A stretch of DNA of 64,000 bases, taken from positions 88,551,180-88,615,179 of the forward strand of contig NC_068990.1 of NCBI RefSeq assembly GCF_001194135.2, read 5' to 3'. Source of the DNA: Octopus bimaculoides. Lineage: Eukaryota. Both the position numbers and the translations under genes were made by a program. Positions 205 through 55,060 of this stretch are shown in pieces. The notes beneath the pieces were generated by a model, which ran no database searches, was not told the DNA's origin, and saw only the letters and a program-made list of their open reading frames with translations. Each line of letters opens with the position of its first letter. The stretch's first letter is position 1.

Positions 205-375
205 ATATTACAAGAGTTGAATGTGGACCTCCAAAAGATGTTGTTGGTGCAAAGAAGTCCTACACTAACACCTCCTATAAATCTGAAGTGACCTACACAT
301 GTCCAGGAAAAGAAATATTAAAATCGTTATGTAAAGAGAACTCTAAATGGACTCCAGTTGCATCTAATTGTAAAG
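205..375 (+). CDS. Exon S1, Sushi/CCP domain (class a)
   Basis: ctag|AT..AAAG|gtaaat; 171 nt; VECGPPKDVVGAKKSYTNTSYKSEVTYTCPGKEILKSLCKENSKWTPVASNCK (C-x-x-P, YTC, C-x5-W, C). Confidence 0.88.
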
Positions 376-2121: not shown

Positions 2122-2153
<32 letters not shown>

Positions 2154-21100: not shown

Positions 21101-22427
21101 ACTTGACACATTGGCTAAACACCTGTTGATCAGCACTTAGACAATACTAAATTAATCAATTAGAAAAAGATATACAAATGATACACACATTTTGAAAGAA
21201 GGTTTCAAATGAGTATGAAGATGGGCTAAAACTCACATGAATTCCAAGTTGTCATTTTGTGGATCAATTATTTGTTTATAATAAATTGTCCATTTAAATT
21301 AAATTATGCACCAGATGCTATATAATGTTTAATGTGTGTGTGTATGGGATTATGAAATGTAATTCTCATTTACTTTCTTTTTTTATCTAGCCAATAAAGA
21401 TATTTTAAAATTTAAAAGAACTTCCATACCAAGAGAAGATGCATTTAAACGGCAGGAAAATATGACCTTAAAGGAGTGTGACCATGCTTGTCATCAAACT
21501 CCAGGATGTAATTCTTATGAGTATGATAAGAAAGCTAAGTTCTGTGATCAAAGTAATGCAACTCACTTGACTCATGACCTTCAACCAGATCAAAAGGATT
21601 GGGATATTTACGTCATTAACCCAGGTCAGTAGAGTGTTTTCATTTTATTTTATTATGCATGTACTTGCATGTAACTGCGTGTTTGTGTGTATTATTTACA
21701 CATACATACATGTGTTTGTGCAATATATATATAGAGGCAATTATATATTTATATAGAGGCAATTATGTAAATAAACAAATTAGACAGATTAAATATATTA
21801 AATATCTATTATAGTAAAAGCAAAATTTTGTCTGTCTGGGACCCTTGTATCTCAGTCTACATTTGCTCTACAAAGACATATTATACCTTTTGGAATCAGA
21901 ATGATCCCAGGATTGAAAATCTGCCCTTCATTTGGTTCTTGAACATCCAGTATTGGGATCTGATTTAAAAACATTTGGATTACTACTTCTTGCAGGTAAA
22001 TATCTTTGTCTTTAAGGTATTTGTACGTTCTCCCTACAACATTACTTTACTTATTTAAAATTTTTGGCACTCCATCTATTTAAATACACTATTTACATTT
22101 CTCCCTCTATGCTTGAGAAGAGTTGTTAAGCCAAGTGATATCATAGCTATGGATGATGCTGGTGTCACGTAACTGGCATCCCTGCTTGTGGCACATAAAA
22201 AGCCAAATAAGACTGGCGCAGCCTTCCAGCTTGCCAGCCCTGGTAAAACCATCCAACCCATACCAGCATGAAAAATGGACGTTAAATGATGATGAAGATT
22301 ACACAGTTCACTCTGATTACCAATTAATCAGATTAATCCAGTTAGCTAAGCGGTGTTATCACAGAATGATCAAAAAAGAATTTGACTGGATTTTACCATC
22401 ATGTGTTGAGAGAGAGAGAGAGAGAGA

Positions 22428-22474
<47 letters not shown>

Positions 22475-25400: not shown

Positions 25401-28400
25401 ATTTTTTACATACCACCCCAAGAGTTGTTTTCCTCTACTTCAACAAAATCCTGACAACTGATCAAACATCTCCCATTATTATTATTATCATCTTTCAGCA
25501 TAAGATACATTTCTAAGAATGAATACGTATTCTTGTGCACCAGGACACATATGTAAAAGCTCACCTGTATGTTTCAGTTGGAGGTAATCCATTTGTACAT
25601 CTGTCTTCTGATGATCTGTTTTTCTTTAAGACTGAATGGCCATAGCTAGCACATGATATGTTTAAGGTATTGTCAACCCTACAAATATACACCATGAGAG
25701 GAGATGTGTACAAATATATTGTCTGCACCCTATGTATTGAGACAAGCTTTTAAAAGAAGTTAGAAAAATGTTCTATAACATAGATGAAGTCTGATTAAGA
25801 TATCATTTTGTAGATCAGTTATTAGTTTATTAATAGAACATCAAATTAAAAAATCATGCACCACATGCTTTTCAATATTCAATATATGTGTGTGATGCAT
25901 GTGATGTGTATTTGGGATTAAGTTGGTGGATGACTATAAAATATATTTCTTGTGTTTTTCTTCCCTTCCAGTTGATGACAAGCCTTTCATGATGAAAAAA
26001 GTTAGCATACCAAAGAAAACTAAGATAGAAGAGCTTCAGGATATGAAATTAAAGGAGTGTGACGAAGCTTGCAGTCAATATGCAGGATGTAACTCTTATC
26101 AGTACAATAAGAAAAAGAAGATATGTGATCTGAGTAATGTGACTCAGTTGAGTGATGAACTTAAACCCAACAATGGAAGCTGGGACATATACATAGTTAA
26201 CCCAGGTTAGTAGAATGTTTCCACCTTATTTGTTGCATGCATGTCTGTGTGCATTTATATACACACATATGTATGTGTGTATGTAAGGCAGATGTTAAAG
26301 GATGATCATGATATCAAGGGTTTATATACAGGGATTTCACATAACGAAGGACTTTGTATAATCAAACACTTCCTAGACCTTCGACCTAACCCCCAACCTG
26401 ACACCTCCACACTTCTTTGTCTGGCTGAACTTGTTCTCTCCCTCAACTGCTTCTCATTCATGGGGTATTTTTATTAACAATTCTTGGGAGTGGCCATGGG
26501 AATGAGAATGGGCCCTATCTATGCGAACCTATTTGTTGGTTATACTGAGGCCCAAATATTCTCACAATTCACTGGTCCCACTCCCGAACTATATGGTTAC
26601 TATATTGATGACTGTATCAGTGCAACCTCACACTCCTGCAAACAACTAGACTCTTTCTTCTCTTTTGTCTAATCCTTCCATCCTGCCCTCAAATTCTCCT
26701 GCACAATTTCCAACACTTCCGTTGCATTTCTCAACATTTCAATCAACATACACCACTCTGCTCTCACTACCTCTATCCACTACAAACACACCGACTCACA
26801 CTCATAGCTTAACTTCTCCTCCCACCCTATCCACACCAAGCTCTCCATCCCTTTCTCCCAATTAGCTCCACTCATAGCTTTCCACTTCATCCTTCATAGA
26901 TATCCCCTCACCACTATCCATACAGCCCTTGTCAGAGTACATTCTGTGGACCATACCTCTGCTTTCTCACCCCACACCTACCCTGCCGTTGCCTGTTTCT
27001 TTTTCACTTTGCTTCTCTCTATATATCTCTCTCTAGCTCTAAGATTTATAACTTATTTTATTATTTTATATTTATATATTTTACATTTTTTCCTATTTAT
27101 TGTTGTCCATTTTAGTTATTCCTTTCTCTTTTCATTGATTACAGGCCTCTTTTTTTTTTTTACTCCTCTCCTTTCTGTCTGTTTTTTTTTTCAGGCATTT
27201 GCTCTCTATCTACTTCTCTCAGCATACTTCTAACAACTGTACAACTTCACACGTTTGATCTCTAATATAATGCAATGAAATTTTCCCTTGATGATCTGTT
27301 TGTGGTTTGGCATCCAGTTGTGCTTGGAACATTCAATTTAAGTAACCACAATAGTTAAGTGTACAAGGGGAAAAAATGATATAAAATTGTGTTTATCATA
27401 ATTTCTCCTACATTTGCCCTGTGTATCATAACCAGTTTACTATGCTGTGTGTATGAAAATGATTCATTTTATTTTAGTTAATATCTTTTATTCTAAATAT
27501 GTAATTATCTCCTCATTCTCCCCTTCTTTCTAACATATACTCACAATTGACATCACTTTCTTTTATCAATTACAGTTATCACAAAAATTAACTGTGGACC
27601 ACCAAAAGATGTTGTTGGTGCATCTAAATCCTACAATACTACTACCTATAAATCTGAAGTGATCTATACTTGTCAAAAAGGAGGAATATTAAAAGCAACA
27701 TGTAAAGAGAACAGGAAATGGGCTCCAGTAGTATCTTGTAAAGGTAATGTAAATAGGGTGTTTCTTTTTGACTCTGTCTCGGTAATTTTGTTTTAGCTTT
27801 AAGTTCCAAGTTTATGTCAGAGGAAGTCTGACTTTGTCCGTGACAATTTCCTTTGTGTTTGTGATCGGTAGGAGGGTGAGAGCTAGTTATCCTCAGACCA
27901 GAGATTTTCCTAAATGCTTGCAACACAATTTATTTCATTAAAGATATTTAAGAGCCAGGTAATGGTAATAATTTGGTTGATGAGTTAAGTCTTCACCAAA
28001 GAACAGAAAGTAACGAAGAGCGTTCTCTCCTTCAGGCTTCTGCTAGTCTCTATCCACTAAACTTCATCTACAATGTTTAGTTGTGAATCAGAATTTTAGC
28101 AACACAGCCACAAGTCTACAGAATATGACATTCTTAAGTACACTTATTACTTCCAGGAATATACCTCAGCTCAGTTTTGGAGTTTTTCTCTTAATTTTTA
28201 ATTTAACTTTTCTCATCCAATCTTTATTTCATCCTCTGAAACACTGTACAATACAATGCACTGAATTTTTATTTACTAGAATTCAACAATCATGCAAGAC
28301 ATCCATTCCACCATCCTAAATCGTAATGAGACAAATAATAAAAGTGGTTTCTGATGGCAAAAGAGTCAGTACTTTTCTATAGAAAAATGCTAGTCATTAT

Positions 28401-31400
28401 CCTTACATCCAATGCTTGGCTGCTGTTTTGTGTTGTTGACCCACCCCCTTACAAGAATGAAAGGTAAAGTTAGCATCGGCTGGATTTCAACTGCAAACAT
28501 GAAAATGCTGAATACATTCCATAAAAAAATCTCTTCCAAAGCTTTAATTAGTATACATGTATATATTTAATATAAAAATGAGAATGATGATGTGATTTTC
28601 TAGAGTGTTGAAGAATCTTTATCTAAAACTAATTGAAGAAACCCACTGTCAAAGACCACCATGAACTCCAAGAAGTGCCCTCTCCATTTAATATTCTTTG
28701 ACCAACAGGTTTTATGCACTGTGGGACCCATTCACCCTCAAGTCACTTTCAATAATTTTCTTTGAGGAGAATATCTTCCCATCCACCCTCATCTTCTTTA
28801 CAAGTGAAACTTTAAAAATACAGATTAGGGATTGACTAAAGAAGAAAGTCCCCATTGTCAGACCCTTGAACCACATCCATCACCTAACTTCTTTTGCTAT
28901 AGCTAGCAGACAGAGGAAAAGGAACTTTTCTGCTTGGTTAAAGGAGGATGTGAGGCAATCATAATGATGGACTTGAATGACAGCTGGATCTGTCTCACAC
29001 ATGATATCTGCTGTTTGACATGAATTTACGAGTCAATAATGCCTGGACACTGAACAAGTGCATATAAAATTAATTTGTTCTACTGTGAACATCTTGAACA
29101 GCACTGCCTGTTAGAACTTCTATGACTACATTTTATTTTGGTTTCATAGACCAATTTGATAACACTACCAAGGGCTCCAGAAAGTTTCCCATAGTATTCC
29201 ATGGTCAAGAAGTTTTTTGAAACAAACTTCCTACCTTATTCTCATCAAACCCCAGAATATCCCTGAGAATATCAATGATCTTCCCCTCAGTTAATCTTCT
29301 ATAGATTACATTGCCCAAGTTTTTGTTCATTTTTCTTCATTAGAAATTATTGATGTTGTTTTTGTTGTTTACATTTATCTCAATCTTACTTTAATTCCAG
29401 TTACTAAGAGCAAATTTTTGAAAGTAAAAAGTGCAATGTTGGATGTACCTGGAAAAACTTTGTGGAGAAAGAAAAATGTAACAGCAGAAGCCTGTGTAGA
29501 AAAATGTTCATCTGACACAAATTGTTTATCATTTGAAATAACTAAAGGAAGTGGAAGATGTTACTTATCGAAGGCAACTGCAGCTTCCAACAAGAAAATA
29601 AAAGAAGCCAACAGAGATTACTACCAACGAGTAGATCGTAATTATTCTTTGTGTTTCTCTTTACCTCATTTTCTGAAATTTGTGATCCATTTGTACTTTG
29701 TAGTTTATAGAAAACCATTTCTGTAAAGACATTGATAGATTTATCTCTAGGGACAAACATAAACACATTCGTGAAATAAGAAATTTTGGGAACTATAAAT
29801 ACTATTAAGTCATTCTCATAGAGCATTTGTTTATCTTGAACACTTTTCTGCAATATGTTTTCAATCATTTCAAAAATAGGTATTTTAGACACATCTTGCA
29901 GTATTACAAGGTGTTAGCTGGAATTGGATTTAGTAAGAAGTCAATAAAAAATTAGCATTCTCCACCTCCATAGTTGAAGGCTGTAAGAAAGAAGAAATGT
30001 GAAGTGATTTTTTAGTCACAGACCTGCATTATTATTAGGAGTTTTACAAAACATCTATATCAACCAACGAAATGGTGCAGGTGCTGAACATTGTGCGGGG
30101 ACCCAATCACTAGGACCTGCTCTGCTCTGTGAGCTGTATTTCCACCTACCAAACATGCTCCCTTCACATTTAGAAATCAGTTCGTCTTGATGCAGCTGTA
30201 CTCATCCATATGCATCACATAAACATACCAGTGCAGCCCTCTCTCTTGTACACATCTGATGCCTTGTATACCCAACTTTTCTCTCAGATCACTTGCACTC
30301 TGTTGTACATGAACACTAACGTTACCCATCCTGCAGAGCATGCTGGCTTCATTTCTTTCAAGCTTTCACGCATTCTCAGATGTCACAGCCCATGTCTCAC
30401 TGCCATGTAACATAGCTGTTCATACACAGGCACCATACAATCTATCTTTCCCACTGAGGAAGAGGCCTTGTGTTACTAACAGAGGTAGTAACTCTCAGAA
30501 TTTTGCCCAGTCCAATCTTTTTCTTGCAACTATGCATTCAAAACTACTTCCTCCGCTGCTAACTTTGTGACCTAAGTAATGTAGATAATACATTTGTACA
30601 CCCCTCTTCTGATGGTGTGCTTTTGCTTAAGATTAAAGGATCATCTTTTGAACTATGTTTAGATTCGACAAAAGCACACCATTAGAAAATAAGGCACAAA
30701 TGGATTACATGCAACTTAAATTTTGAAACAATGTTTCAAATGAGCCTCAAGATGTTCTACATTCACATTAATTCTGACTTAATTGTCATTTTGTGCATCA
30801 ATTATTTGTTTATAATACAGGCATGTCCAACCCATGCCTGCATGGAAAACGAATGTAAAATGTTTATGATGATGATAACCATTTAAAACAAATTATGCAA
30901 CAGATGTTATATAATATTTAATATGTGTGTGAATATAAAATGTCTTTCTTTCATTTCTTCTTTATCTAGCCGATGATGATGTTTTTACATTTAAAAGAAC
31001 TGCCATACCAGGGCATGATTCACCTGATCGGATTAAAGGAATCAGTTTAAAGGAGTGTGATCGTGCTTGTCTTCAAATTCCAGGATGTAAATCTTATGAG
31101 TATCATGAAAAAAAAAAATTCTGTAATCCATCTAATGAGACTCACCTGACTTATGACCTTAAACCCAACAAAGATGGATGGGATATACATATCATGAACC
31201 CAGGTCAGTGGAGTGTAATTCATTTATTTCACGTATCTGTATGCATGTGTGTGACAGTTTGTTTATAAAACACACATACAGATGTAGATCAGTTTAAAGG
31301 AATCCTGTAGCTTGTTAGCATCCTGTAGCTTGTTAGCATCAAATTCCACGTTGAGTACTGATGCAAATATCAAGTGTGTTATGAAATAAATACACATATG

Positions 31401-34400
31401 AGTTTTTCTACTTTGGAAATGTGCTGTATTTAACTGCATTTGTTCATTATTATTATTGATATGGCAGTTTGACCAAGGGAGCCCAACAGAGTAAGAACCA
31501 GATTTAAAAATGGGTACTGGATTCAGTTTATGTGTGTGTAACATAATCCCAAATTTAAAAGAGTGGGATAGGTAATATGTAAGCTACATACATTTCTTAA
31601 CTAGCTGAAGTTCATTACGTAAGTATTATGTAACAAACTATTTACTTATATAAATTGGAAGACAACACACTAGAAGTCCACTGCAATCTATACTTAACAT
31701 TTTTTAAAAAGACTTTTAATGCCTGAATACATACCCCCTTATTCTCCAGAATGACACCAATTTTTTCTTTTCTCTTTCCATTCCTTTTCTTTCTCCTTTT
31801 CTTCCTACTCTTTGACCCTTAACCACACCCACTCTATCCATTATTTCAGTTCCACCTTACACCAAAACATTCAGTGCTTTTTTAAACTTGCTTTCTTTGT
31901 TTTGTTTTGTTTTTTGTTATTGACTTTACTATCCATTTAGAATTCCTCAGCAATGCAAATTTCACTGAGAACCTTTGAATGTCATATATTGAATAGTTTC
32001 TCTCAGACAGCACCTGGGAAACAAAAGCAACAAGAATAAATACATAAACCTAGTACTGAAAAGCAAAGAGAACAGTATCATGTATCTCAGCAGTGATCTC
32101 TGCAAGAAGCAATCTCTTCATAACCCAAAAGAATCTGACTAACATACTTCAAAGAAGTCCCAGATGTGAAGCACACAGCACACCAAAAAAAAAAAAGGCT
32201 ATGCTTGTGTGTATTTCTTGAAGACTTAAAGAAGACAGAAATATTGACATGAAATGCAGCCTTCTTGGACTCATGACCACTACATAATGTCACACTTCAA
32301 AGCTTATTTGTTTGCTATATGTACTGAATACACCTCTATCCAAAGGCTGTATGGCCCTCATAAGACATTCATCTCTTAGCTTGCTTAGTGACTATAAAAT
32401 CAAAGAGCATGTGACCATGATTAAGGCTTTCTCTAAGTTGATCAATGCTAAATAACATCACACTTCGAAGCCAAGAGAAGGTGATTGATACAAAATACCC
32501 AATAAATAAAAGAAGCAGGGAAGCCATTGGAAACTCAACGTGCAACAAGACATGTCAATTATGTCATATTTCTGTGGAAAACATCACAAATCTGATCAAC
32601 AATTAACCAAAAATGTCAACAATGTACTATTTCCTAATGTGACATGATGTTGTAACTAACACAATATATAATGCTATCTGAAAACAAGAATGTTCCTGGA
32701 TGACTACTGAGGATCCCTCTATAATCAAATATATGCACAAGCATCAATACAAGGAGAATTGCTGGAACATTACCTTCAAAATTTCTAGCAAACTAGATAG
32801 TGCTGTTTGAGAGGGATAAGAAAAAGCATGTACAGTTATAGACATCAGCTGCCTCACTCGTGAACATCTCTTCAAAAAATTAAAGCGAAAGTGAATAACT
32901 ATGAACAACTGGTTTGAAACTTCAGCTTTTATACCTATCCTGACTACAAATTCACATTTATACCATTCATAACTGGTGCAATTGGTCTTGTGAATAAATG
33001 CCTACATGAGATTCTAGATGAGTTACAGTTTTCAGAAGAAAGAAATCAACCAGCTAATACACATGTTACAAATATAATCTGGAAGTGGAACAGTGAAAAT
33101 ATGCAAGACGTTCATAAAGTTCAGAATATAAATTTGTTTTCATCTCCATTCCAACAATGGAGCTTTGTATGTTCCTAGGAACCAGCTTCTTCCTTACAGG
33201 AAGTCTTCACATAATTAAGAATAGTAGAAAACTACAAATATACACGTGTTTCTATGTGTGAGCAAATTTCTTCTATTTGATTCATGCAATATGTTTTATT
33301 CTAACATTGTTATTATCTCCTTATTGTCACCCTTCTCCTAACATGTACACATCATTGATATCAATTTTTGTTTTCAATTCCAGTTTACAGCAAAATAAAA
33401 TGTGGACGACCAAGAGACATTGCTGGTGTATTGATGTCCTACAATTCCACCACCTATAGATCTGAAGTGACCTACACATGTCCAGACAGAGAAGAACTGA
33501 AGTCAAAATGTGAAAAGGACCGAAAATGGACTTCAGTAGACTCTGTTTGTGAAGGTAAGGCAAATAGCTTCCTTCTTGCGGTTTCTGTCTATGTAATTTT
33601 GTTTCACCTTGTGCTAAATGTCTTAGTCAGAGGAGGGCTGGCTCACTCTATAGCAATTTCCACAGTGATTGTGGATGGTAGGAGGGAGAAAGGAAGCTGT
33701 CCTCAGATCAGGGAACTCATCAAACAGAGTAGACATCATTTATTCTACCCAAGGGCCAGGTATTAAATTGGATGATGGATTAAGTCTGCCAGCCAAATAG
33801 GATAAGTGTGGAAGTTTCTTCCCCCAGCAAGTTTCCACGTAACTTTCATCTACCAAATTTCGTCCTCAGTTGTAGAGCAAATTTTTAACCAAAAAACCAA
33901 GACTAGTAACTCTTCCATGTTGAAAGAACAAGCTGTTCAGCATGAGTACCAATATCTTATCACCAAAAATGCTGTGGTGAGAATTGTACATATTGGGTAT
34001 AAGAACAGTATTACCCAAATAAATATTTGGATACAGTTATCTAGAATAACCCTTCATAGAATTATTGATGAATAACCCTTCATACATACATACAGTGTGG
34101 GATATATAACACACTGCCTAGGTGCCAAGCTTGGGAAATTAGGCTTCTCAAAACCAGAAACGAGAAAGCTGATTCAAAGACAACAGATCCAATCCATCAC
34201 TGGAACTGTAAAAATTTGTAAAACTTTTCAGAAGTTTATCATTTAAGTATATATGAGAATGTCTAGATATGGAACTATATGCATGAGATTGTACACATAA
34301 AACAAAACATACAAGTCTGCACATATACATACATACCCTACTGTTGATGTTGAAATTCCAATGAAGGAATTTTTAATCAAGCAGTTATACATTCAGAATA

Positions 34401-35673
34401 TCTTCCTTCACTGCTAATTAGGTCACCCATGTAACAGACACTGTCTACAACTTTTAGGGAGTCTCCTGAAAAATCCAATTCCTGTGCGTTCTTAATGTTT
34501 ATTGTTCCTGCACATCTGACACTTAAAAAGACCATTTTCTCTGTTAAACTACCTGTAATTACACTGCACTTCTGATGTGTGCATATCTTACACTGAGTAC
34601 ACCATATGGAATTCCAACCAACACCTACTTATTTAGCAGGGCACACACATAAAATAGATGCAACATAGATGTCAATTTCTGTTTTCAATTTCAGTTTTTA
34701 AACACATTGACTGTGGAAATCCAAAAGACATTGCTGGTGCAACAAAGTCCTATGACACCACCACCTATAAATCTGAAGTGACCTATACTTGCCCAGAGGG
34801 AGAAAAACTAAAGTCAACATGTGAAAAGGACAACAAATGGACTCCAATTGTGGAAACCTGTAACGGTAACATAAGTAGCTTCTTTCTTGTGCAATTTTGT
34901 TTTAGTTTTGTGTTAAATGTGTTTGTCATAGGAAGACTGACTGAATACATTGCAAGTTCCTCAGTGGTTGTGGTTGTTGGTGGGGGAGAACTAGTTATCC
35001 TCAGACCAGAGATCTCACAAATGCTTACAACAATGTGGACATAGTCAATTCCACTCAAGGCCAGGTAATGGTATTAAACTGGATGATGGATTAAGTCCAC
35101 CAACCAAGAGCTGGAACTATGGACAGTTTTTTCTCTCTTACTCTCTTCCACATTGTTCACATCCACCAAATTTCTTCTTCAAGTCTTAGCTGTGAAGTGA
35201 ATTTTTAACCATGCAGAAATAACTCTACCTTATACCTTATGTTTGACAAGTAAACTTATTACTTCCATAGCTATACTACAGCACATTTTGATAGATTTTC
35301 TCTTAACTTCTAACAGGAAATTTCTTTGCCATACTTTGTGCTATCATCCAGAACTCTGTAAATATAATGTCTGAGTTTTTCTTTACTAGAATGTAGCAAT
35401 CCCCTGATACAGACTTCTGATGCCCTTGTTATCTTTCAGTCAACTACCTATAATTATACTACTACTAATAACAACAATGGTTTCTGATTTAGGCACAAAG
35501 CAGTAGTTTTTAATGGATTGCATTTAGCCAAAACCATGACCATTGCTAATTGCCTGGCACATTGTTTTATTCAACCGCGCAAGATTGAAAGCTCTTGGTT
35601 TAATTTGAACTGATGGACAAAAGAGCCTGATTACTTATTGTAATGCATTTCTTGTAATACTCTAATTAGTACC

Positions 35674-35709
<36 letters not shown>

Positions 35710-41700: not shown

Positions 41701-44549
41701 CCCACCCCTTACATGAATGAAATGTAAAGCTAACACGGGCTGGATTTGGACTGGAAACATGAAGAGCCTGAATGCATAACATAAAGTATCTCTTCTAATA
41801 CTCTAACTAGTATTCATGGATACGTTTAATATAAAAATTAGAATGATGATGAACTCCGCTTGAAAGTTGGATCTTTATCTCAAACCAATTGAAAAGCCTG
41901 ACTAGCAAAGACTACCATGATCAATTAATATTCGTTGACCTTTAGGTTTTATTCTCTGTGGGACCAATCCACTCTCACATCACTTTCGACAATTTCCCTA
42001 GAAGTGAATATCTTCTTCTCCATCCCCATCTTCTTTATAATCAAGTATAATCTGATGCCTGGTTCAACACTGCCGCATGACCCTTTAGGTGGGCGTGGCA
42101 AATGTGGTCAAGAATACATGGTCAATGATAAGGTGTCTATTACAGATGCAAACATTCACATTGAGCCGAAGATGCTCTGGTTGGACAGGGATGATATGAA
42201 TCTCACAAGTGTAGGATGGAGGATGCCATCAACACTTTATGGAATTGCTGTTTCTGTCATGATTTGCTACTTAAGAAATAAAAATCCAAGCTCATTTTAA
42301 TTAATCATGTACTTATTATTTAGGTACATGGCAAACACAATTAGAGAAAGCTATGAGGTTGTGTGATATTCACATCTTTCTGAAGGGCAATAATTGTCTA
42401 TGTAAAGTGGACTGACTTAGATTGAGAATCAAACCCAGATCATTGATTCACACCACTCAATTCATATTTATATTAAAAGAACAAGTGGGGAAAAATACTC
42501 GCATCACTTTCTGCATGGAAAACAAATAGCCGTGTGTTTATGGAAGTGCATTTACAAGTATGCAAGCTTCTTGTTATTCTTTCTGAAATTTTATTAATGA
42601 CCTTCTCATTGGTCCACAAAATGTGCACCGATTTTTTGGAGCATAGTCTGCATCTTTTGGAAAGGGCATTCTGTAGTGGTGCATATCTTATTATGTACCA
42701 AGTCAGATTACATTTGATCATATTATCTTTAATTTGCCACACAAGTACCAACATCACTGGGATGTCTCTTGGCATGCTAGTAAATGACCATTCACACAAT
42801 ATAGTGGATACAAATTAGCATAACCGTTGACAAATTATTAATCACAGTTTACCTAACTGTATGGATGAATAACCACAATCTCCTCATTCTTAGAAACACC
42901 CCACCACACAAGTTACCAACACCACTGTGATAACTCTTACCCCTTGCATACTGCTTCAAGAGAGATAAAAGCCAACTTGGGCCTGTCAATATATATCGCT
43001 ATCCAAAAGATGAAAACACAACAAACCTACAAGTAACTGCACTGGATATCCTAAACCTGGCATTGATATTTTCTACAGGTTATTAGTTGTTTTATTAGCC
43101 AGTGAATGTACATTACCAGAAAACTACCAGGTGTATACCATACAACTTATAAACTACTAACAACATTTATATATAGTTAAGAATTTATTATCACAAATAT
43201 TGGTAACATCAACAATAATTATAATTATTCTTGCTAATGATGGATGGAAAGAATCTGTAGAGCATCAGAAAAACTATGTTGGGTATTTTTTCTGGACATA
43301 TATACTTTTGAGTTCAAATCCAGCTAATGTCAACTCTGCCTTTTCAGGCCCATTAAAATAAAAAATAAAAAAAACAGTCAAGTGTAGGAGTCAATTTAAT
43401 TGATTAACTTCTACCTCAAATTTTTGTCATTTTTCTATGTTAGAAATCATTGTTATTTACATTTGTCTCAATCTTCCTTTCATTCCAGTTTCTAAGATCT
43501 ATTTTGTGAAAGTAAAAGGTGCAATTCTGGATATACCTGGAAAAACTTTGGGGAGTAAGAAAAATGTAACAGCAGATGTCTGTGCAGAAAAATGTTTGTC
43601 TGACAAAAATTGTTTATCATTTGAAATAAAGGGAGAAAGTGGAAAATGCTATTTATCACAGGAAACTGCAGCTTCCTCCAAGAAAATAAAAGCAGCCAAA
43701 ACCAAAGATTACTACCAACGAGTAAATGGTAATTATTCTTTCTGTTTCTATTTTCTAGTTTTGCTGAAATTTGTGATTCCATTTCTATGTCATAATACAT
43801 TCTGTTCCAATAGAACATCCACTTTTAAGTGGGGTTAGATATTATTTCTTAATATATATATATAGAACTGACAAGTTTATCTATAACCACAGACATAGAC
43901 ATGTTCCTAAAATAAGCAACTTTTGGAACTGTAAATACTATTAGGGCATTCTCGTATTAGAGAGGGAGCACCTTTATTCAATCTTTTATTCAACTTAAAT
44001 ATCTCAATGAACATGACTAGGAACCTTTTATCCTGTATTAGACACCATTTCTCAGGCACACACACAAGTATCACAAGCTTATGAATGTGCATAGGGTTAA
44101 AGTTTGTTACTCTTCCAGCATTGTATGTTACAACAGGAAATGCATACACATATCCAGCTTTTATTCAAGATGCCTACTTGTAACTGTCAAAATCCATCAA
44201 GCTCTCTGCTGGGAGAACTCTACCTTTTTATGTCAGTGGTATATAGGGCAACTTTCACTCCAACTGATGGTTTCCCAGTAAATTACATGAGATTTACAGC
44301 CAGTGATTTCATGGAAATTTCACTCAGCCTATATACTCTTTTAAGTTCATGTACAGGGAAAAGTCCACCTCAGTGTACTGTTTCATTTGGATTCTACCCA
44401 GCATAATCTGAAGCTTACTCACCAAATCCTAATCTTTTTCTACCAGAACATTTAATTGCAGTCTTTGTCTTTCTAATCCATAGAAGATGAAAAACACATA
44501 CACAATGTGTACGTATACAAGTGGGGGAGATGAATATGTGTATGTATAG

Positions 44550-44582
<33 letters not shown>

Positions 44583-46964
44583 ATTGCATATGCATATATA
44601 TGTATAGCTATGTAGTTGTGTATATTTTCTCGTATGTATCTGTATTGTTTTTGAGACTTTCCAATAAGATTTTAGTCAAAGTTAAAAGCTTGTTCTTCAA
44701 CAAAATATTTACCTTCAAACATTCCTACTTCTCAGCCTACATACATGTAAATGTGCATATATACATGCATACTTTCATATGTTTACGTATGTATTAATAT
44801 GTGTATTCAAAAGAACTATGTAAGGCCAAATTGATTCACTGTCGCATGAGTGGATCCTTTAGCCAAAAATGAAAGCACCAATTTGGCAGAAAACTCTTGG
44901 CACTTTGCTTGCCTAAATGTTATGTACAATTTGTACATAAGGTGTCACAACCAATCATTGTAAGTCCAATTTCTTAGGTGACTAATGAACAACCAGCTGG
45001 GAAGAAGGGGATGTGGGCTTTTCTTTAAGATTAAATGGTTTCAACAACACTTGACACATTGGCTAGCCATTTGTTGGTCCGCACTTAGACAATACTAAAT
45101 TAATCCATTAGAAAAAAGGATATACAAATGATACTCAACTTAAATTTTGAAAGAAGATTTCAAATGGTTTGTTAAAACTCACATGAATTCCAAGTTGTCA
45201 TTTTGCAGATCAATTATTTGTTTATAATAAATTGTCCATTTAAAACAAATTATGCACCAAATGCTGTATAATATTTAATGTGTTTGGGAGTATAAAATGT
45301 TTTTCTTGTTTTCTTTCTTTTCTTTTCTAGCTGATGACGATATTTTAAAATTTAAAAGCACTATCATACCAGGAGAAGATATATTTAAACGGCTGAAAAA
45401 TGTGACCTTAAAGGAGTGTGACCATGCTTGTCATCAAACTCCAGGATGTAACTCTTATGAGTATAAGGAACGAGTTATGTTCTGTGATCGAAGTAATGTG
45501 ACTCACTTGACTCGTGACCTTGAACATAACGAAGATGGTTGGGATACTTACGTCATTAACCCAGGTCAGTAAAATGTATTCATTTCATTTTATTATGCAT
45601 GTGCTTGTAACATGTGTTCGCTCCCGTGTAAAAAAAGAGTTCTGTTACGATGAAGTAGAGAAATTTGAAAAGACAACAAGAAACCGGTTATTTCTCCAAA
45701 NNNNNNNNNNATATATATACAGCTATATATATGTGTGTGTGTGTGTGTGTTAAAAAAAAATTTGTATTTATACCTATGTGCAAATTATTTTAGCTTCACC
45801 CAATACCTTTCATTCTCCTCATTTTCACCCTCTTCATAACATACAACTGATATCAATTTCTCTTTTCAATTTCAGCTTATGCAAATATTAAATGTGGACC
45901 TCCCAAAGATATTGTTGGTACATTAAAGTCCTACAAAACCACTGCCTATAATTCTGAAGTACTCTATACTTGCCCAGATGGAATACAACTAAGGTCAATA
46001 TGTCAAAAGCACAACAAATGGACTCCAGTAGCATCTTCCTGTAAAGGTAACATAAATCCTTTCCTTCCTATTGCCTCTAAGTAATTTTGTTAAGTTTTTC
46101 TGTTAAATGCCTTTGTCAAAAGAATACTGGCTGGCTCCATTACTATTTCCGTGGTGTTCGCAGCTGGTGGGAGGGAGAGAGGAAGTTATCCTCAGACCAG
46201 AGATTTCTTCAGAGGCTTGCAATGTAGTGGATTCCATTAATATTATTCAAGTGCCAGATAATGCTATTAAATATGGTGATAGATTAAGTTTCCTGACAAA
46301 GAAATTGAAGGCTAGAAACTTGTCACCAGTTAGCTTCCAAAAAGTTTCCATCCAGTAATTTTCATCCACAAGGATTTGTTGTGAAGCAGATTTTTAACCA
46401 CACACACAAAACTCTACCCAATACTTCACTGTTGTTAAGTAAACTTATTAGCTATACTTCACCTCATCTTGATACATTTTGCTCTTAATTTCTAACGTGA
46501 TCTTTCTCACCCATATTTTATGTCATCATCCAAAACTCAGTACAANNNNNNNNNNNNNNNNNNNNNNNNNNNNNNNNNNNNNNNNNNNNNNNNNNNNNNN
46601 NNNNNNNNNNNNNNNNNNNNNNNNNNNNNNNNNNNNNNNNNNNNNNNNNNNNNNNNNNNNNNNNNNNNNNNNNNNNNNNNNNNNNNNNNNNNNNNNNNNN
46701 NNNNNNNNNNNNNNNNNNNNNNNNNNNNNNNNNNNNNNNNNNNNNNNNNNNNNNNNNNNNNNNNNNNNNNNNNNNNNNNNNNNNNNNNNNNNNNNNNNNN
46801 NNNNNNNNNNNNNNNNNNNNNNNNNNNNNNNNNNNNNNNNNNNNNNNNNNNNNNNNNNNNNNNNNNNNNNNNNNNNNNNNNNNNNNNNNNNNNNNNNNNN
46901 NNNNNNNNNNNNNNNNNNNNNNNNNNNNNNNNNNNNNNNNNNNNNNNNNNNNNNNNNNNNNNNN

Positions 46965-46996
<32 letters not shown>

Positions 46997-49272
46997 CATA
47001 TATTAAGGATTATTTTTATGTTCAATTATAATAAAAACAGTTTTACATTAATCTGATGGGTTACCCTATACTTTTGTAGGGTACAAATTTATTCTTATAC
47101 AAAAATGTTGTTGAGCAACATTGAAGTTTCAGCCAGCCAAGCCTTTGTTTGATGATGGCTTAGCAGGCTGAAACCTCAAAATCACTGTCAACAACACTTT
47201 TCTAGAAGAATAATATATATGTATATATATTAATATTTTTGAGAAAATGAAATATTGTTTAGAATGTGGAGGAAAAGAATTTTCATTTATATTTACTTAC
47301 TAGATGAAGATGAAAGTGAAATTATTTTAGTTCTTCAATGAAAAACATTCTAAAATCAGTGGAGTGATGCCTTGACTAGCCATATTTAGTTACATCCTTT
47401 TACATTCTGGGCTCAAATTCTACCAGGGTGTACTTTGCTGAGGTTGATTAAACAAGCACTGTTCAGGATCTGTGGCCCTGTGTTTAAGTTAGAAACCATT
47501 ATCATTAATATTGGAGACTTCAACAATAATTATAATTATTCTTGTTATGGGTACTGGATTGACAGAATCATTCAACCGACAGACAAAATATGTTATGGTA
47601 TTTGTTCTGGCGATATTATGTTTGAGTTCAAATCTTGTTGATGTTAACTTTGTCCTTCTTATGTCAATAAAATAAGCTGTCAGTCAAGTGTAGAGGCTAA
47701 TTTAATTGGCCAGTTCTTACCTAAAAATTTGGCTTACTTTTTATGTTAGGAATTGCTGCTGTTGCTGTTGTATTTCATTGACCTAAATGTTACTTTACCT
47801 TTAGATCCTCTGGTCCAGTTTGTGAAAATAAAAGATTCAGCTCTGGATGTACCTGAGAAAACCTTGTTGGATAAGAAAGATGTAACAGCAGATGAATGTG
47901 CAGAAAAATGTTTGTCTGGCAAAAGTTGTTTATCATTTGAAATAAATAAAGAAAATGGAAAATGTTACTTATCAAAGAAATCTGCAGCTACCGCCAAGAA
48001 ATTAAAGGCAGACAAAGACAAAGATTACTACCAACGATTAAAGTGTAATTATTCTTTGTATTTTATTATTGGAATTCTCTTTTCCATTATTTCTGAAATT
48101 TGTGATTCCATTTGTACTTTCAAACCATATAGACCCCAATTTCTATAAAGACATTGACAGGTTTACCTATGAGGCCAGATATACACACATTCTAGAAATA
48201 AGCAATATTAGAAAATATAAATACTGTTAAGACATTCTCACACAACTTTTATTTACCTTGAACAATTTGATGCATATTTTTAATTGTTTTTATATGTAAG
48301 AAAGGAAATTCTTGTTGTTTTTCTTCAGCCTCAGTAGTAGTAGTATTAGTAGTAGTGGTGGTGGTGGCATTAGCAATAACAGTAGCTTTTTCTTCATTTC
48401 TCCATGTTAGCATCACTTAGTACTGTTACAACACAATGTCTTGGCTCTAGTTTTTGTCCTTCATTATCCAGTATTCAAAATAACAGAAAATGTAATGCCA
48501 ATTTATGTAGTTGTATATTTCCTAGATTTTCCCATGGTTAATGTAGCAAGATACCCTTCCTACCACCAACCATTATACTAAATGAAGTGAGTATAGTTTC
48601 CCCATGTGTGTGCAGAGTGATATATTTATTTCTGTTTAACAAATCAGAGAAATGAAAATGGAGCAACAAACATAAGATCCCACCCTTGGGCAAGGACAAA
48701 ACACAGATTGACATACACACACACACACTTATGTATACATATATGTACATCTACAGATCTATCTTCTTAAGCTTAATTAAAATATAGTTTGTTTTTAAAA
48801 TACAAAAATTAATTATACTTAAATCCAATTTTTTGCCTTATCTATATTTTTTCAACTTTTTTTATACAATTTTTTTTTTTTTTGCATGGAACCAAAGCTA
48901 TGAAATTCCTCATGCTTTATTCTATCATTGAAGCAAAGATAAATATATTTTGCTTTTAAAAGTTATTTAGATCTAAATGTGATTGGTGGCATTACTTACT
49001 CTCCTATAATGTTACTACAAATTTTGGTGTAAACTTTTTTCTATTGGACCATATCTCAATTTTTTAATGCCAAAATGTAGCTAGGGACCAGTCCTCTTCG
49101 AAAATGTTAACAGTTTTCAATTTAGTTAAGAACTAAATTAGCGACAAACTCTGGAAGATGCTGCATGTGTGTAAATTGTGGCCTTAAGAATATTTTTCAA
49201 CTACTACCATAGTTGGATGATCAACTACTACCGTAGTTGAATGATATACATCCACATATAAATATACCCAGA

Positions 49273-49322
<50 letters not shown>

Positions 49323-52300
49323 NNNNNNNNNNGTGTAAATATGCACACACACATATATATATGTTGGGTCATCCCATAAATAATATGGTTTTTTTATAAT
49401 TCTTTTATTTTTCAAAATTAAGATAAAGTTATTTTTTAATCTAAAATATACTCTCTTTCATTTTTTACAATACTCTTCCATTTTATGATGCTCTTTATCT
49501 GATAGACTTGCAATGCTTCTCTTCCAAAATTCACCTATTCACGTCGAAAAATACTCCTCCAATACTGTTCTGACCTTGTCTACAGAATTCTTATTTTTCC
49601 CATCAAAATGATTTTGAAGGCTGCAGAATAAATGATAATCAGACGGGGCAATGTCCAGCAAATATGGTGGCATTATAAAATTATTTTCTTTTATTGTTTA
49701 ATATGTTTCAGTCATATGACTGTGGCCATGCTGGAGCACTGCCTTCTAGCCAAAGAAATTGACCCCTGCACTTATTCTTTGTAAGCCTGGTACTTATTCT
49801 ATTGGTCTCTTCATCTGCAGAGACATAAACAAACCAACATTGGGGAGACAAACACAGACACCAAAACAAACACATAAACATATACATATATATACAAAAG
49901 GCTCCTTTCAGTTTCTGTCTACCAAATCAACTCACAAGGCTCTGGTCTTCCTGAGGCTATAGTAGATGACACTTGCCCAAGGTGCCATGCAGTGGGATTG
50001 AACCCAGAATCATGTGGTTGAGAAGTAAGTTTCTTACCACACAGCCTAAAAAAATCATGTACCACATGCTTTTCAATATTTAATACATGTGTGTGATGCA
50101 TGTGATGTGTGTTTGTGATTGGTCAATAAATGACTATGAAATATATCTCTTGTGTTTTTCTTCCTTTCCAGTTGATGACAAGCCTCTTGTGATGAAAAAA
50201 GTTAGCGTACCAAGAAATGCTACTGTAGAAGAGCTTGAGGATGTGAACTTAAAGGAGTGTAGTGAAGCTTGCAATCAATATCTAAGATGTAACTCTTATC
50301 AGTACAATGAGCATGATAAGATATGTGATCTGAGTAATGTGACTCAGTTGAGTGATGAACTTAAACCCAACAATGGAAGCTGGGACATATACATAGTTAA
50401 CCCAGGTTAGTAGAATGTTTCCACCTTGTTTGTTGTGCACATGTCTGTGTGCATTTATATATACATATATGTATGTGTATATGCAAGGCAGATGTTAAAA
50501 GATGATGATGATGATGATCCAGGTCAGTAGTGTGTTCCCATATTATTTATTGTGTGCATATCTGTGTGTATGTATATATACATATATATGTGTGCGTATG
50601 CGGAAAACAGACATTAAAAGATGATGATGATGATATATATGATGTCTGATCAATAAGTATCCGGACTGGTGCTATAAAAACAAAACTATAATACATACCA
50701 ATTTTGAATTTAATCTCCTTTAAAGTACTCCCCCTTTGGAAGCCACACACTTAATCCAGCGCTATTTCCATTGATGGAAGCATTCCTGGAACTCCTTTCC
50801 TCTGTTAATCAGCAGTTGCCACGTCACATTCACATGGATTTCCTCAACATCTTGAAATCTTCTTCCTTTCAAGCAAGATTTGAATTTTGTATGAAGTTAC
50901 TGCCCTCATTAGGAAAAGATTTAAAACACCATTGCTTTAAAATTTTGAGTTCAGATTTATCAACTGTTAAATCTAAAGCTTTTTCATGCTTATAACAAGA
51001 ATTTTGGATGTCTATAAAAACTTATTGGATTTAGTTGGATTGAAATGCAAGCTAAAATTAGGTTACGCTTCACATTTTGCAAAGCAAGTGTCAAACATCC
51101 AAGAAATCACAAGCATAATATGAGAGCTTGAACTAAATCAAGTTCTGGCCAATGTAACAAATTTATTTTGTCTCTTTCTGCCACATCTGCTTCCTGTGAG
51201 AAACCACTTTCTTCATTAAAGCAAGAAGATAATTATATGACATGTTCTGAAAGTGAAGAGAAATTCAGTAATTTGGTCTTCATTTCCATGAATAAAAGAA
51301 CTTCTGAAGATGAAGGAAGAGCGTGGTGCTGATACATTTTAAACCAAAGTGATCGATGAATTTGTCAATAAGAAATGAAGAAGTAAACTCATTTACCAAT
51401 AAATTTTAAATAGCTCATTATTTTTAGGTTCTCTTGTTTTCTCAGATTTCTCTTTTAAACAATAATAGTCATCATGGCAATCCCTTTACCAGGGTATTGT
51501 TAATAGGGAAACATCAAATCTAGTGGAGAGGATATCAAGCTTGAAGTGTACCCTGTTAGTAGAAGTGCATTTTCACACATTAAGATTAGTTTATACAACA
51601 TTCAGCCTTTGGTGAGGAGGACAGTAATATACTCCTGACCCTCTTTTCACCTTGAGAATTGGCCTGCATTATGAACTGCATGCTCTGGTTTCCAAGTCAC
51701 CCTTCATCACTGGTATGTGTGCGTGTGCATGCAAATGATTCAGTTTTCTTTAGTCAATAACTTTTACTGCAAATTTGTTACTATCTCCTCATTCTCCTTT
51801 TTCCTCCTGTCATAAACTCAAAATTGATATGAATTTCTCTCATCACTTCCAGTTGTCACAAAAATTAACTGTGGAGCACCAAAAGATGTTGCTGGTGCAT
51901 CTAAATCCTATAGTACTACTACCTATAAATCTGAAGTGATCTATACTTGTCAAGATGGAGAAGAATTAAAGGCAACATGTAAAGAAAACAAGAAATGGGC
52001 TCCAGAAGTGTCTTGTAAAGGTAATGTAAATAGGTTCTCTCTTTTTGGCTGTCTCGGTAATTTTGTTTTAGCCTTGTGTTCAATTTCTATGTCAGAGGAA
52101 ATCTGATAATGTCCATGAAAATTTTCATTGTTTGTCACTGCTTGGAGGGTCAGAAATAGTTATCCTCAGACCAGAGACCATCCTAAATGCTTGCAACACA
52201 GTTGGCTTCATTAAAGATATTGAAAAACCAAATAACGGTATTAATTTGGTTGATGGATTAAGTTTGCCAAACAAGAGCAGTATATGAGGTAGTGTGTTCT

Positions 52301-54995: not shown

Positions 54996-55060
<65 letters not shown>

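What the first reader, a model, noticed from the sequence alone, without database searches (positions are those of the whole stretch)
25972..50405. Strong signature of diversifying selection between paralogous PAN exons
Hand codon-by-codon comparison. B6 (25972-26205) vs B10 (50172-50405): 18 of 77 full codons differ and all 18 change the amino acid. No codon differs only silently, and the last 29 codons are identical. A9 vs A13: 15 single-nt differences, 12 replacement and 3 silent. Cys, the DLSNxT motif and WD.Y are invariant. Inference: the domains are under positive selection on a variable face, as in immune receptors, gamete-recognition proteins, toxins or host-microbe adhesins. Conversion of the 3' part could contribute to the lack of silent changes.
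Basis: partly seen in the sequence, partly recalled or inferred. Interest (0 to 1): 0.85.

Follow-up and report, generated by a model that had tools for sequence, protein, structure and literature searches.

The report
Octopus Sushi–PAN repeat gene, near-neutral exons

Summary
B6 and B10 differ at 26 bases in 18 of 77 codons, all changing the amino acid, and the last 29 codons are identical. A9 and A13 differ by 12 replacement and 3 silent changes. The inference of a "strong signature" does not hold.

- **Pairwise dN/dS:** only about 17.5% of sites are silent in these AT- and Lys-rich exons. B6/B10 gives 1.40 (Fisher p=0.49). A9/A13 gives 1.05, the neutral ratio.
- **Pooled over HOR2 vs HOR3 (13 exon pairs):** replacement divergence is 0.092, silent 0.104 and flanking introns 0.149.
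- **Site models:** standard M1a/M2a and M7/M8 tests are significant for all three exon families. The signal disappears once codon-to-codon rate variation is allowed (2ΔlnL 2.1–2.7).
- **Simulations:** rate variation alone reproduces the standard signal. The rate-aware test had 93% power against the fitted selection model.
- **Gene conversion:** the identical 3' tract (110 nt, P<1e-5) is best explained this way.

The locus is a 41-exon, 2,882-codon open frame of Sushi–PAN–PAN modules in a four-module higher-order repeat. It is orthologous to the uncharacterised Octopus sinensis LOC118764742 and is clearly kept open by selection. Weak diversifying selection is not excluded.

The parts
205..17030 (+). 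Higher-order repeat unit 1 (modules 1-4). Exons: S1 205-375, A1 877-1116, B1 1786-2019, S2 3854-4024, A2 5258-5497, B2 6854-7084, S3 7530-7697, A3 9496-9735, B3 11040-11273, S4 13156-13326, S5 13988-14158, A4 15029-15268, B4 16797-17030
   Evidence: All exons have ag..gt borders and lengths divisible by 3. The unit is collinear with O. sinensis XP_036361601.1 residues 1666-2580 at 72-92% amino-acid identity.
19214..38924 (+). Higher-order repeat unit 2 (modules 5-8). Exons: S6 19214-19384, A5 19963-20202, B5 21391-21624, S7 22823-22993, A6 24427-24666, B6 25972-26205, S8 27576-27743, A7 29401-29637, B7 30970-31203, S9 33384-33554, S10 34695-34865, A8 37727-37966, B8 38691-38924
   Evidence: Exon table. 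Collinear homology with unit 3 at 80-92% in blocks around each exon.
40850..60569 (+). Higher-order repeat unit 3 (modules 9-12). Exons: S11 40850-41020, A9 43489-43728, B9 45331-45564, S12 45876-46046, A10 47805-48044, B10 50172-50405, S13 51853-52020, A11 53060-53299, B11 54672-54905, S14 55824-55994, S15 57557-57727, A12 59565-59804, B12 60336-60569
   Evidence: Exon table. The gaps lie in introns.
61291..62589 (+). Start of higher-order repeat unit 4: S16 61291-61461 and A13 62350-62589. The gene runs off both ends of the window.
25972..26205 (+). Exon B6, a PAN domain at position b of unit 2
   Evidence: Pfam PAN_1 36.0 bits against a cut-off of 21.4. The AF2 model has pLDDT 76 and a PAN fold, TM 0.73-0.80 to the HGF N domain and the plasminogen PAN domain.
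50172..50405 (+). Exon B10, a PAN domain at position b of unit 3, the positional paralogue of B6
   Evidence: Pfam PAN_1 36.4 bits. It differs from B6 at 26 nt in 18 codons.
26118..26227 (+). 110-nt tract identical between the B6 and B10 loci (last 88 nt of the exon plus 22 nt of intron): a probable gene-conversion tract. The counterpart is about 50318-50427.
   Evidence: Longest identical run, permutation P<1e-5, within a block carrying 54 differences in 468 columns.
25845..26312 (+). Whole block alignable between the B6 and B10 loci (counterpart 50047-50512). The introns outside it are unrelated.
   Evidence: Differences: upstream intron 17/127, exon 5' part 26/146, exon 3' part 0/88, downstream intron 11/107.
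43489..43728 (+). Exon A9 (PAN domain)
   Evidence: PAN_1 40.2 bits. It differs from A13 at 15 nt, all within 43500-43659; the last 69 nt and the next 25 intron nt are identical.
62350..62589 (+). Exon A13 (PAN domain), positional paralogue of A5 and A9
59859..60041 (+). Assembly artefact: an exact repeat of 59666-59848 on the far side of the 10-N gap (an unmerged contig overlap). It creates a false partial A exon.
   Evidence: 100% identity over 183 nt.

Best explanation
The region is the middle of one very large octopus gene for an extracellular, glycosylated protein. The protein is built from tandem three-exon modules of Sushi, PAN ('A') and PAN ('B') domains. Four modules (13 exons, about 21-24 kb) form a higher-order unit that has itself been duplicated in tandem at least three times.

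B6 and B10 occupy the same position in units 2 and 3, and A9 and A13 the same position in units 3 and 4.

After duplication the copies diverged with very weak constraint on most residues (omega about 1). The cysteines, the N-x-T sequon, the WD motif, the reading frame and the splice sites stayed under purifying selection. Short gene conversions centred on exons repeatedly re-homogenised parts of the copies.

The B6/B10 pattern is a mosaic. A recently converted 3' tract has no differences at all. An older 5' part has diverged at about the local neutral rate, and because about 83% of its sites are replacement sites, nearly all its changes alter the protein.

**Shown:** gene structure, domain identity, orthology to an octopus gene, omega about 1, the conversion tract, and maintenance of the open frame.

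**Inferred:** the extracellular adhesive or lectin-like role, the duplication history, and conversion rather than nucleotide-level constraint as the cause of the identical tracts.
For: **Structure.**
- All 41 exons have ag..gt borders and are in phase 1-1. They join into an 8,649-nt frame with no stop codon.
- The B-to-S and A-to-B junctions, and the S-to-A junction G|GTAA, agree with the spliced relative P0001.

**Domains.** PAN_1 and Sushi score above the Pfam cut-offs, and the model has a PAN fold.

**Orthology.** Modules 1-4 are collinear with O. sinensis XP_036361601.1 at 72-92% identity. Relatives exist in O. bimaculoides and O. vulgaris.

**Not a pseudogene.** About 30 nonsense changes would be expected on terminal branches under neutrality, and none is seen (P~1e-13).

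**Near-neutral protein evolution.**
- Pairwise omega is 0.24-2.8, mostly 0.6-1.4.
- Pooled HOR2 vs HOR3 gives pN 0.092 and pS 0.104, against intron p 0.149 (summed).
- M0 omega is 1.06, 0.93 and 0.75 for B, A and S.

**Rate heterogeneity rather than omega above 1.**
- M1a+gamma fits better than M2a by 2.5-4.1 lnL with one parameter fewer.
- Adding an omega>1 class then gives 2ΔlnL 2.59, 2.71 and 2.11.
- Synonymous changes rise together with replacement changes across codons in B and S.

**Conversion.**
- The 110-nt identical run.
- B7/B11 differ at 1 base from -26 to +21 around the exon, while the flanks differ by about 10%.
- The 3' third of even-type B exons is homogenised within this genome but not conserved between species.
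Against: - 'No silent-only codon' in B6/B10 is nominally unlikely under neutrality (P 0.017-0.055).
- The even-type B sub-family has M0 omega 1.44. Cross-validated variable sites give omega 2.98 (p=0.033, one of six such tests).
- In the A family, synonymous changes do not rise with replacement changes.
- Omega about 1 over 75-90% of a disulfide-bonded domain is high for pure relaxation, so some sites may still have omega above 1.
- The rate-aware fits used branch lengths fixed from M0 and my own implementation. It was calibrated only by simulation (1/24 false positives under M1a).
- Identical tracts cover the exon plus 20-30 nt on each side, where splicing signals also lie. Constraint therefore cannot be fully separated from conversion.
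Confidence: 0.65

Rival explanations
1. Diversifying (positive) selection on a variable face of the PAN domains, as in immune receptors, gamete-recognition proteins or adhesins.
For: - Standard site models: B family M1a/M2a 2ΔlnL 18.2, M7/M8 20.6, M8a/M8 17.8; A family 12.9; S family 23.6.
- The even-type B sub-family gives 21.7.
- Cross-validated variable sites in even-type B have omega 2.98, p=0.033.
- Variable sites recur in the ortholog comparison (p=0.011).
- They fall in loops, strand edges and the 46-48 hairpin of the model.
- There are no silent-only codons in B6/B10 (P 0.02-0.05).
Against: - Pairwise omega is not above 1.
- Replacement divergence does not exceed intron divergence.
- The site-model signal vanishes with codon rate variation, although that test had 93% power against the fitted M2a; only 1 of 28 simulations fell as low as the observed value.
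- Rate heterogeneity with omega<=1 reproduces the standard LRT: median 14.9, with 36% of simulations above the observed value.
- The odd-type B sub-family shows nothing.
- Five of the six cross-validation tests are non-significant.
Confidence: 0.2
2. The exons are decaying pseudo-exons of a dead or dying gene array, so omega about 1 is simple neutrality.
For: Omega is about 1 in most pairs, and exon divergence is similar to intron divergence in several pairs.
Against: - There are no stop codons in 2,882 codons, where about 30 nonsense changes would be expected on terminal branches alone (P~1e-13).
- All 82 of 82 splice sites are canonical, and indels occur only in whole codons.
- The Cys, W and sequon positions are invariant across deep paralogues.
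- A spliced relative exists as an ORF with the same junctions.
- 10-30% of sites have omega about 0.
Confidence: 0.03
3. Assembly artefact: B6 and B10 are alleles or mis-scaffolded copies of one locus rather than paralogues.
For: The scaffold has seven N gaps. One of them hides an unmerged 183-bp overlap. Units 2 and 3 have gaps at the same relative place.
Against: - Units 2 and 3 differ by 10-23% in alignable intron sequence and have unrelated intron insertions. That is far beyond allelic divergence.
- Four successive units with distinct sequences are present.
- No overlap exists at the three gaps inside the finding.
Confidence: 0.03

Closest known systems
Octopus sinensis uncharacterized protein LOC118764742 (XP_036361601.1, 2,643 aa), with relatives in O. 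bimaculoides (XP_014770598.1, XP_052826947.1, XP_052826949.1) and O. vulgaris (CAI9728792.1, CAI9728790.1)
   Same: It has the same Sushi-PAN-PAN module order, including the double-Sushi module. Residues 1666-2637 are collinear with window modules 1-4 plus S6 at 72-92% identity.
   Different: The O. sinensis model ends right after the S6 equivalent, so units 2-4 (which include B6, B10, A9 and A13) have no counterpart in it. Their best matches anywhere are 64-73%. No function or publication was found.
PAN/apple-domain proteins: the HGF and plasminogen N-terminal PAN domain, factor XI/prekallikrein apple domains, and apicomplexan microneme adhesins/lectins (TgMIC4, EtMIC5, SML-2)
   Same: The fold is the same (TM 0.6-0.8). 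The Pfam PAN_1 match and the core of four cysteines are shared. The microneme proteins also carry PAN domains in tandem arrays and bind carbohydrate or protein ligands (the ligand binding is from general knowledge).
   Different: Sequence identity is only 12-22%. The domains here have four Cys, not the six of true apple domains. They alternate with Sushi domains. No ligand is known.
Tandem-repeat recognition proteins that combine concerted evolution with fast divergence, such as abalone VERL and sea-urchin EBR1 (recalled from memory, not tested here)
   Same: They are arrays of repeated extracellular domains in which some repeats are homogenised by conversion and others diverge quickly.
   Different: Positive selection in those cases was shown with orthologous and population data. 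Here omega is not significantly above 1, and no reproductive or other role is known.
SVEP1-like multi-Sushi proteins (the name given to the O. vulgaris and O. sinensis neighbours CAI9728790.1 and XP_036361599.1)
   Same: Long extracellular arrays containing Sushi/CCP domains.
   Different: No VWA, EGF or pentraxin domain is visible in the window. The name is an automatic annotation.

Membership tests
PAN domain (Pfam PF00024, PAN/apple superfamily) | Profile match above the curated cut-off | tested here: met
   B6 36.0, B10 36.4, A9 40.2 and B7 34.1 bits, against a cut-off of 21.4.
PAN domain (Pfam PF00024, PAN/apple superfamily) | Four core cysteines and a helix packed on a beta-sheet | tested here: met
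   C29, C33, C39 and C51 are invariant in all 25 A and B exons. The AF2 model has strands plus helix 26-35, with TM 0.73-0.80 to the HGF N domain and the plasminogen PAN domain.
Apple sub-type (factor XI/prekallikrein) | A third disulfide joining the N- and C-terminal ends (six Cys) | tested here: not met
   Each A and B exon has only four Cys.
Sushi/CCP domain (Pfam PF00084) | Profile match above the cut-off, four Cys and a conserved Trp | tested here: met
   S7 scores 22.2 bits against a cut-off of 20.7, a marginal pass. The pattern C..C..C..W..C is present in all 16 S exons.
Octopus LOC118764742 gene family | Collinear Sushi-PAN-PAN modules with high identity to the annotated octopus proteins | tested here: met
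   Thirteen consecutive exons match XP_036361601.1 in order at 72-92% identity. The phmmer E-value is 0 for P0001 against that protein.
Genes under diversifying selection | dN/dS significantly above 1 between the cited pairs | tested here: not met
   B6/B10 omega 1.40, Fisher p=0.49; codons 1-48 only, omega 1.34, p=1.0. A9/A13 omega 1.05.
Genes under diversifying selection | A site class with omega>1 in models robust to recombination and rate variation | tested here: not met
   Standard LRTs are significant. With gamma rate variation 2ΔlnL is 2.59, 2.71 and 2.11. The partitioned and sub-family tests give the same picture.
Genes under diversifying selection | Replacement rate above a neutral reference (introns) | tested here: not met
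   Pooled pN 0.092 against intron p 0.149. B6/B10 5' exon 26/146 against flanks 28/234, p=0.13.
Genes under diversifying selection | Variable sites clustered on one surface of the domain | tested here: inconclusive
   The sites lie in loops, strand edges, helix positions 30/34 and the 46-48 hairpin according to the secondary structure of the model.
Concerted evolution by gene conversion in a tandem array | Identical tracts longer than chance, silent divergence below intron divergence, and homogenised segments that are not conserved between species | tested here: met
   110-nt identical run, P<1e-5. B7/B11, S6/S16 and A4/A8 show 0-2 silent differences against 10-15% in their introns. The 3' third of even-type B exons is homogenised here but differs from the ortholog at 19% of positions.

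The most novel reading that the evidence does not exclude
The array could be an octopus-lineage recognition or adhesion protein. In that reading, a subset of loop residues in the even-type B and the A PAN domains is under real but moderate diversifying selection, masked here by conversion. Because every exon is phase 1-1, modules could also be skipped in any combination to give variant isoforms. Neither idea is excluded. The rate-aware estimates still put omega at 1.3-2.5 for part of the sites, and even-type B has omega 1.44 overall.
Probability: 0.12. Interest if true: 0.7.

Novelty: new member of a known kind. Interest (0 to 1): 0.3.

Why it matters
**For the scan.** A run of replacement-only codon differences between paralogous exons is not evidence of positive selection in two situations: when few sites are silent (17-20% here), and when the copies exchange sequence. 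Standard site models gave p-values down to 8e-6 that rate heterogeneity alone reproduces.

**For biology.**
- The locus documents a very large, uncharacterised, cephalopod-restricted Sushi-PAN-PAN gene family. It has a four-module higher-order repeat and exon-centred conversion.
- Amino-acid turnover is unusually free even though the reading frame is strictly maintained.
- If later data showed true diversifying selection, the gene would be a candidate recognition molecule in octopus.

Tried and rejected
- **Wrong first reading of the Sushi donor site.** I first read the Sushi exon's 3' end as 'GGA AAT|GT' and could not find a phase-1 donor. Aligning the 3' ends showed the conserved donor is G|GTAA one codon earlier, which makes all exons phase 1-1.
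- A spliced protein could not be handed to the exhaustive search, so I used the natural relative P0001 instead.
- **No DNA for relatives.** P0001 is not on record. No orthologous codon analysis was therefore possible.
- **Species not identified.** Using a transposon ORF (hAT/GTF2IRD2-like) gave hits spread over fish and molluscs, which is uninformative.
- **First simulation run timed out**; it was repeated with single-threaded workers.
- **Intron flanks are a noisy neutral reference.** Forced global alignments of the flanks inflate divergence where homology ends, so I relied on the blastn-bounded blocks.
- **Literature.** Two searches found nothing on this family.
- **Not done.** Full branch-length optimisation of the rate-aware models was too slow. 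It seems unnecessary, because fixed and free branch lengths gave similar LRTs without gamma (16.7 vs 18.2, 12.7 vs 12.9, 21.4 vs 23.6).

Full report
**1. What is at the coordinates**

The window is eukaryotic: 34% G+C, with seven N gaps. On the + strand it carries three kinds of short exon that recur in a fixed order.
- S exons are 168-171 nt and encode a Sushi/CCP domain.
- A exons are 237-240 nt and encode a PAN domain.
- B exons are 231-234 nt and encode a second kind of PAN domain.

Pfam confirms PAN_1 for A and B (34-40 bits, cut-off 21.4) and Sushi for S (22.2 bits, cut-off 20.7). An AlphaFold model of B6, built on the 25 A and B paralogues, has mean pLDDT 76. It superposes on the HGF N domain, the plasminogen PAN domain, apicomplexan microneme PAN domains and factor XI apple domains with TM 0.6-0.8.

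All 41 exons have ag..gt borders and lengths divisible by three, and all are in phase 1-1. Joined in order they give an 8,649-nt frame of 2,882 codons without a stop.

I first misread the Sushi donor site. Aligning the 3' ends shows G|GTAA conserved in 16 of 16 copies. The three junction types agree with a 279-aa spliced relative, P0001, the only hit of the indexed protein search.

**2. Higher-order structure**

The modules S-A-B follow a period of four.
- Modules 1, 5, 9 and 13 resemble each other, as do 2, 6 and 10, then 3, 7 and 11, then 4, 8 and 12.
- The fourth module always has two Sushi exons.
- The unit is 13 exons and about 21-24 kb. The window holds units 1-3 and the start of unit 4.

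A9 and A13 are the A exons of position a in units 3 and 4.

Units 2 and 3 are collinear, but only blocks of a few hundred bases around each exon still align, at 80-92%. The rest of the introns hold unrelated insertions.

**3. The assembly gaps**

The three gaps inside the finding are 45701-45710, 46546-46964 and 49323-49332.
- They lie in the introns B9|S12, S12|A10 and A10|B10, and none touches a compared exon.
- Exon order and homology offsets across them match unit 2.
- No sequence is repeated across them.

A different gap, 59849-59858, does hide an exact 183-bp unmerged overlap. That overlap fakes a partial A exon at 59859-59996.

Intron divergence of 10-23% between units rules out the idea that B6 and B10 are alleles.

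**4. The observation**

It is confirmed.
- B6 and B10 differ at 26 nt in 18 of 77 codons. All 18 change the amino acid, and codons 49-77 are identical.
- A9 and A13 differ at 15 nt, 12 replacement and 3 silent.

There are small corrections. Across all 12 B exons the invariant residues are K8, P13, four Cys, Y44, S54, N55, T57, L59, L63, W70, D71 and P77. 'DLSNxT' is fixed only in the even-numbered B exons, and the Y of 'WD.Y' is not invariant.

**5. Is it more than chance?**

These exons are rich in Lys, Asn, Asp and Glu codons, so few sites are silent. For B6/B10 there are 40.5 silent and 190.5 replacement sites.

Seven of the 18 differing codons have two or three changes. On any mutational path about 3.5 of the steps are synonymous.
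- Nei-Gojobori gives dN 0.129, dS 0.092 and omega 1.40 (Fisher p=0.49).
- For codons 1-48 alone omega is 1.34 (p=1.0).

A direct simulation of 26 neutral changes in codons 1-48 gives 'no silent-only codon' with probability 0.017 under uniform rates, and 0.031-0.055 with codon rate variation. That is nominally low, but the pair was chosen after inspection of many.

For A9/A13, neutrality predicts 3.4 silent codons and three are seen (P(<=3)=0.54). Omega is 1.05.

**6. All positional pairs and the intron yardstick**

- Pairwise omega over 48 positional pairs ranges from 0.24 to 2.8, mostly 0.6-1.4.
- Pooled over the 13 exon pairs of unit 2 against unit 3, pN is 0.092 and pS is 0.104, a ratio of 0.88.
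- The alignable intron flanks of the same pairs differ at 645 of 4,337 positions, or 0.149 (summed).
- For B6/B10 the 5' part of the exon differs at 26/146 and the two intron flanks at 28/234 (p=0.13).

Replacement changes therefore do not run ahead of a neutral reference.

**7. Site models**

I wrote a Goldman-Yang codon likelihood (F3x4 frequencies, neighbour-joining trees).

| Family | M0 omega | M1a vs M2a, 2ΔlnL | p | With gamma rate variation, 2ΔlnL |
|---|---|---|---|---|
| B | 1.06 | 18.2 | 1e-4 | 2.59 |
| A | 0.93 | 12.9 | 0.0016 | 2.71 |
| S | 0.75 | 23.6 | 8e-6 | 2.11 |

For B, M7 vs M8 gives 20.6 and M8a vs M8 gives 17.8. The fitted omega2 is about 2.7-3.8 for 16-37% of sites.

These models hold the synonymous rate constant across codons, and conversion between paralogues breaks the single-tree assumption.
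- Letting the whole-codon rate vary (gamma, four classes) improves M1a by more than adding the omega>1 class does, with one parameter fewer.
- The omega>1 class then adds only the 2ΔlnL values in the last column, all with p>0.25.
- The same holds for codons 1-48, codons 49-77 and the even-type and odd-type sub-families: 2.5, 1.8, 3.9 (3.1 for even-type codons 1-48) and 0.1.

Three simulations frame this.
- Under plain M1a my code gives 1 false positive in 24.
- Under M1a plus gamma, with omega never above 1, the standard test exceeds 5.99 in 80% of runs and exceeds the observed value in 36%.
- Under the fitted M2a, the rate-aware test is significant in 93% of runs, and only 1 of 28 falls as low as the observed 2.59.

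Ancestral-state counts agree. In B and S, codons with many replacement changes also have more synonymous changes per silent site. In A they do not.

A cross-validated test picked variable sites in one sub-family and measured omega in the other. It gave omega 2.98 (p=0.033) for even-type B and 0.9-1.8 (not significant) in the five other comparisons.

**8. Conversion**

- The B6 and B10 loci share a 110-nt run without any difference (26118-26227). The block otherwise carries 54 differences in 468 columns (P<1e-5).
- A9/A13 show the same pattern: all 15 differences lie in the first 171 nt of the exon.
- B7/B11 differ at one base from -26 to +21 around the exon, while their flanks differ by about 10%. 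S6/S16 and A4/A8 behave alike.
- The 3' third of the six even-type B exons is nearly identical at nucleotide level, including third positions. Against the O. sinensis ortholog, however, that third is as variable as the rest (22/116 vs 39/192 amino-acid differences).

Homogenisation within the genome without conservation between species is what conversion predicts. Splicing signals in the 20-30 nt next to the exons may contribute.

**9. The gene is alive**

With the observed terminal-branch lengths and codon make-up, about 30 nonsense changes would be expected under neutrality, and none is seen (P~1e-13).
- There are no frameshifts; the only indels are whole codons.
- All 82 splice sites are canonical.
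- 10-30% of codons have omega near 0.

Omega about 1 therefore means very weak constraint on most surface residues, possibly mixed with some diversifying selection. It does not mean decay.

**10. Identity**

An exhaustive profile-free search with P0001 found large proteins of the same architecture:
- Octopus sinensis XP_036361601.1 (LOC118764742, 2,643 aa)
- O. bimaculoides XP_014770598.1, XP_052826947.1 and XP_052826949.1
- O. vulgaris CAI9728792.1 and CAI9728790.1
- weaker hits in Argonauta and Acanthosepion (Sepia)

Window modules 1-4 plus S6 match XP_036361601.1 residues 1666-2637 exon by exon at 72-92% identity. B2, the position-b exon, is the most diverged at 72%.

That model ends right after the S6 equivalent. 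Units 2-4 find nothing better than 64-73%, except that B7/B11 match P0001 at 84-86%. The window therefore comes from an octopus. I could not fix the species.

The O. sinensis gene spans 152.7 kb and its DNA was not retrievable, so no orthologous codon test could be run. No paper mentions the family.

**11. Function**

This part is inferred. The protein has 164 Cys and 35 N-x-S/T sequons in 2,882 residues and consists only of extracellular domain types. It is most likely a secreted or surface glycoprotein with adhesive or lectin-like modules. Nothing in the window shows a signal peptide, an anchor or a ligand.

**12. Verdict**

- The counts are right.
- The 3' conversion idea is right.
- A recurrently variable set of positions exists (22/72 vs 39/236, p=0.011).
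- The claim of a strong signature of positive selection is not supported. The data fit omega about 1 plus rate heterogeneity from a mosaic history.

Moderate diversifying selection in even-type B and in A remains possible. It needs orthologous and population data to test.

Noticed in passing
window 59666-60041: The 183 bases before the 10-N gap (59666-59848) are repeated exactly after it (59859-60041). This is an unmerged contig overlap, and it creates a false partial PAN-A exon at 59859-59996.
   Followed up: yes
window 22475-22657 and 45701-45710: Units 2 and 3 each have an assembly gap at the same relative place, between the B exon of module a and the S exon of module b. This suggests a hard-to-assemble repeat in that intron.
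   Followed up: no
window 30944-31224 vs 54646-54926; also S6/S11/S16 and A4/A8: There is near-identity centred on exons. B7/B11 differ at one base from -26 to +21 around the exon while the flanks differ by about 10%. Silent divergence in these exons (0-2 changes) is far below intron divergence.
   Followed up: partly
window 13156-14158, 33384-34865, 55824-57727: Every fourth module has two consecutive Sushi exons. The spliced relative P0001 has only one Sushi at the equivalent place, after a B7-like domain, so the pair might be used alternatively. All exons are phase 1-1, so any of them could be skipped in frame.
   Followed up: no
window 50402-50631: The segment just downstream of the B10 donor site is duplicated in tandem. 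26202-26312 matches both 50402-50512 and, at 77%, 50519-50631.
   Followed up: no
window 36653-37015 (-), 26478-26669 (+), 10080-10277 (-): The introns contain transposon debris: a hAT/GTF2IRD2-like ORF (hits in fish and molluscs at up to 78% identity), an ORF with a YIDD reverse-transcriptase-like motif (no Pfam hit), and a LINE RT-like fragment.
   Followed up: partly
window 19214 onward, compared with O. sinensis XP_036361601.1: The O. sinensis gene model stops right after the equivalent of S6. Units 2-4 of the window are therefore either a lineage-specific expansion or unannotated in that species.
   Followed up: partly
window 25972-26117 (B6): Many of the B6-specific states are Lys codons (KKTK, KKKK). 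B10 often keeps states shared with B2 (AGA, AGT, GAG CA-). B10 also has an N-A-T sequon at codons 15-17 that B6 lacks.
   Followed up: partly
window 2028-2192: A (CAY)n run in the intron after B1 reads as poly-His in one frame. It is a microsatellite, not coding.
   Followed up: no
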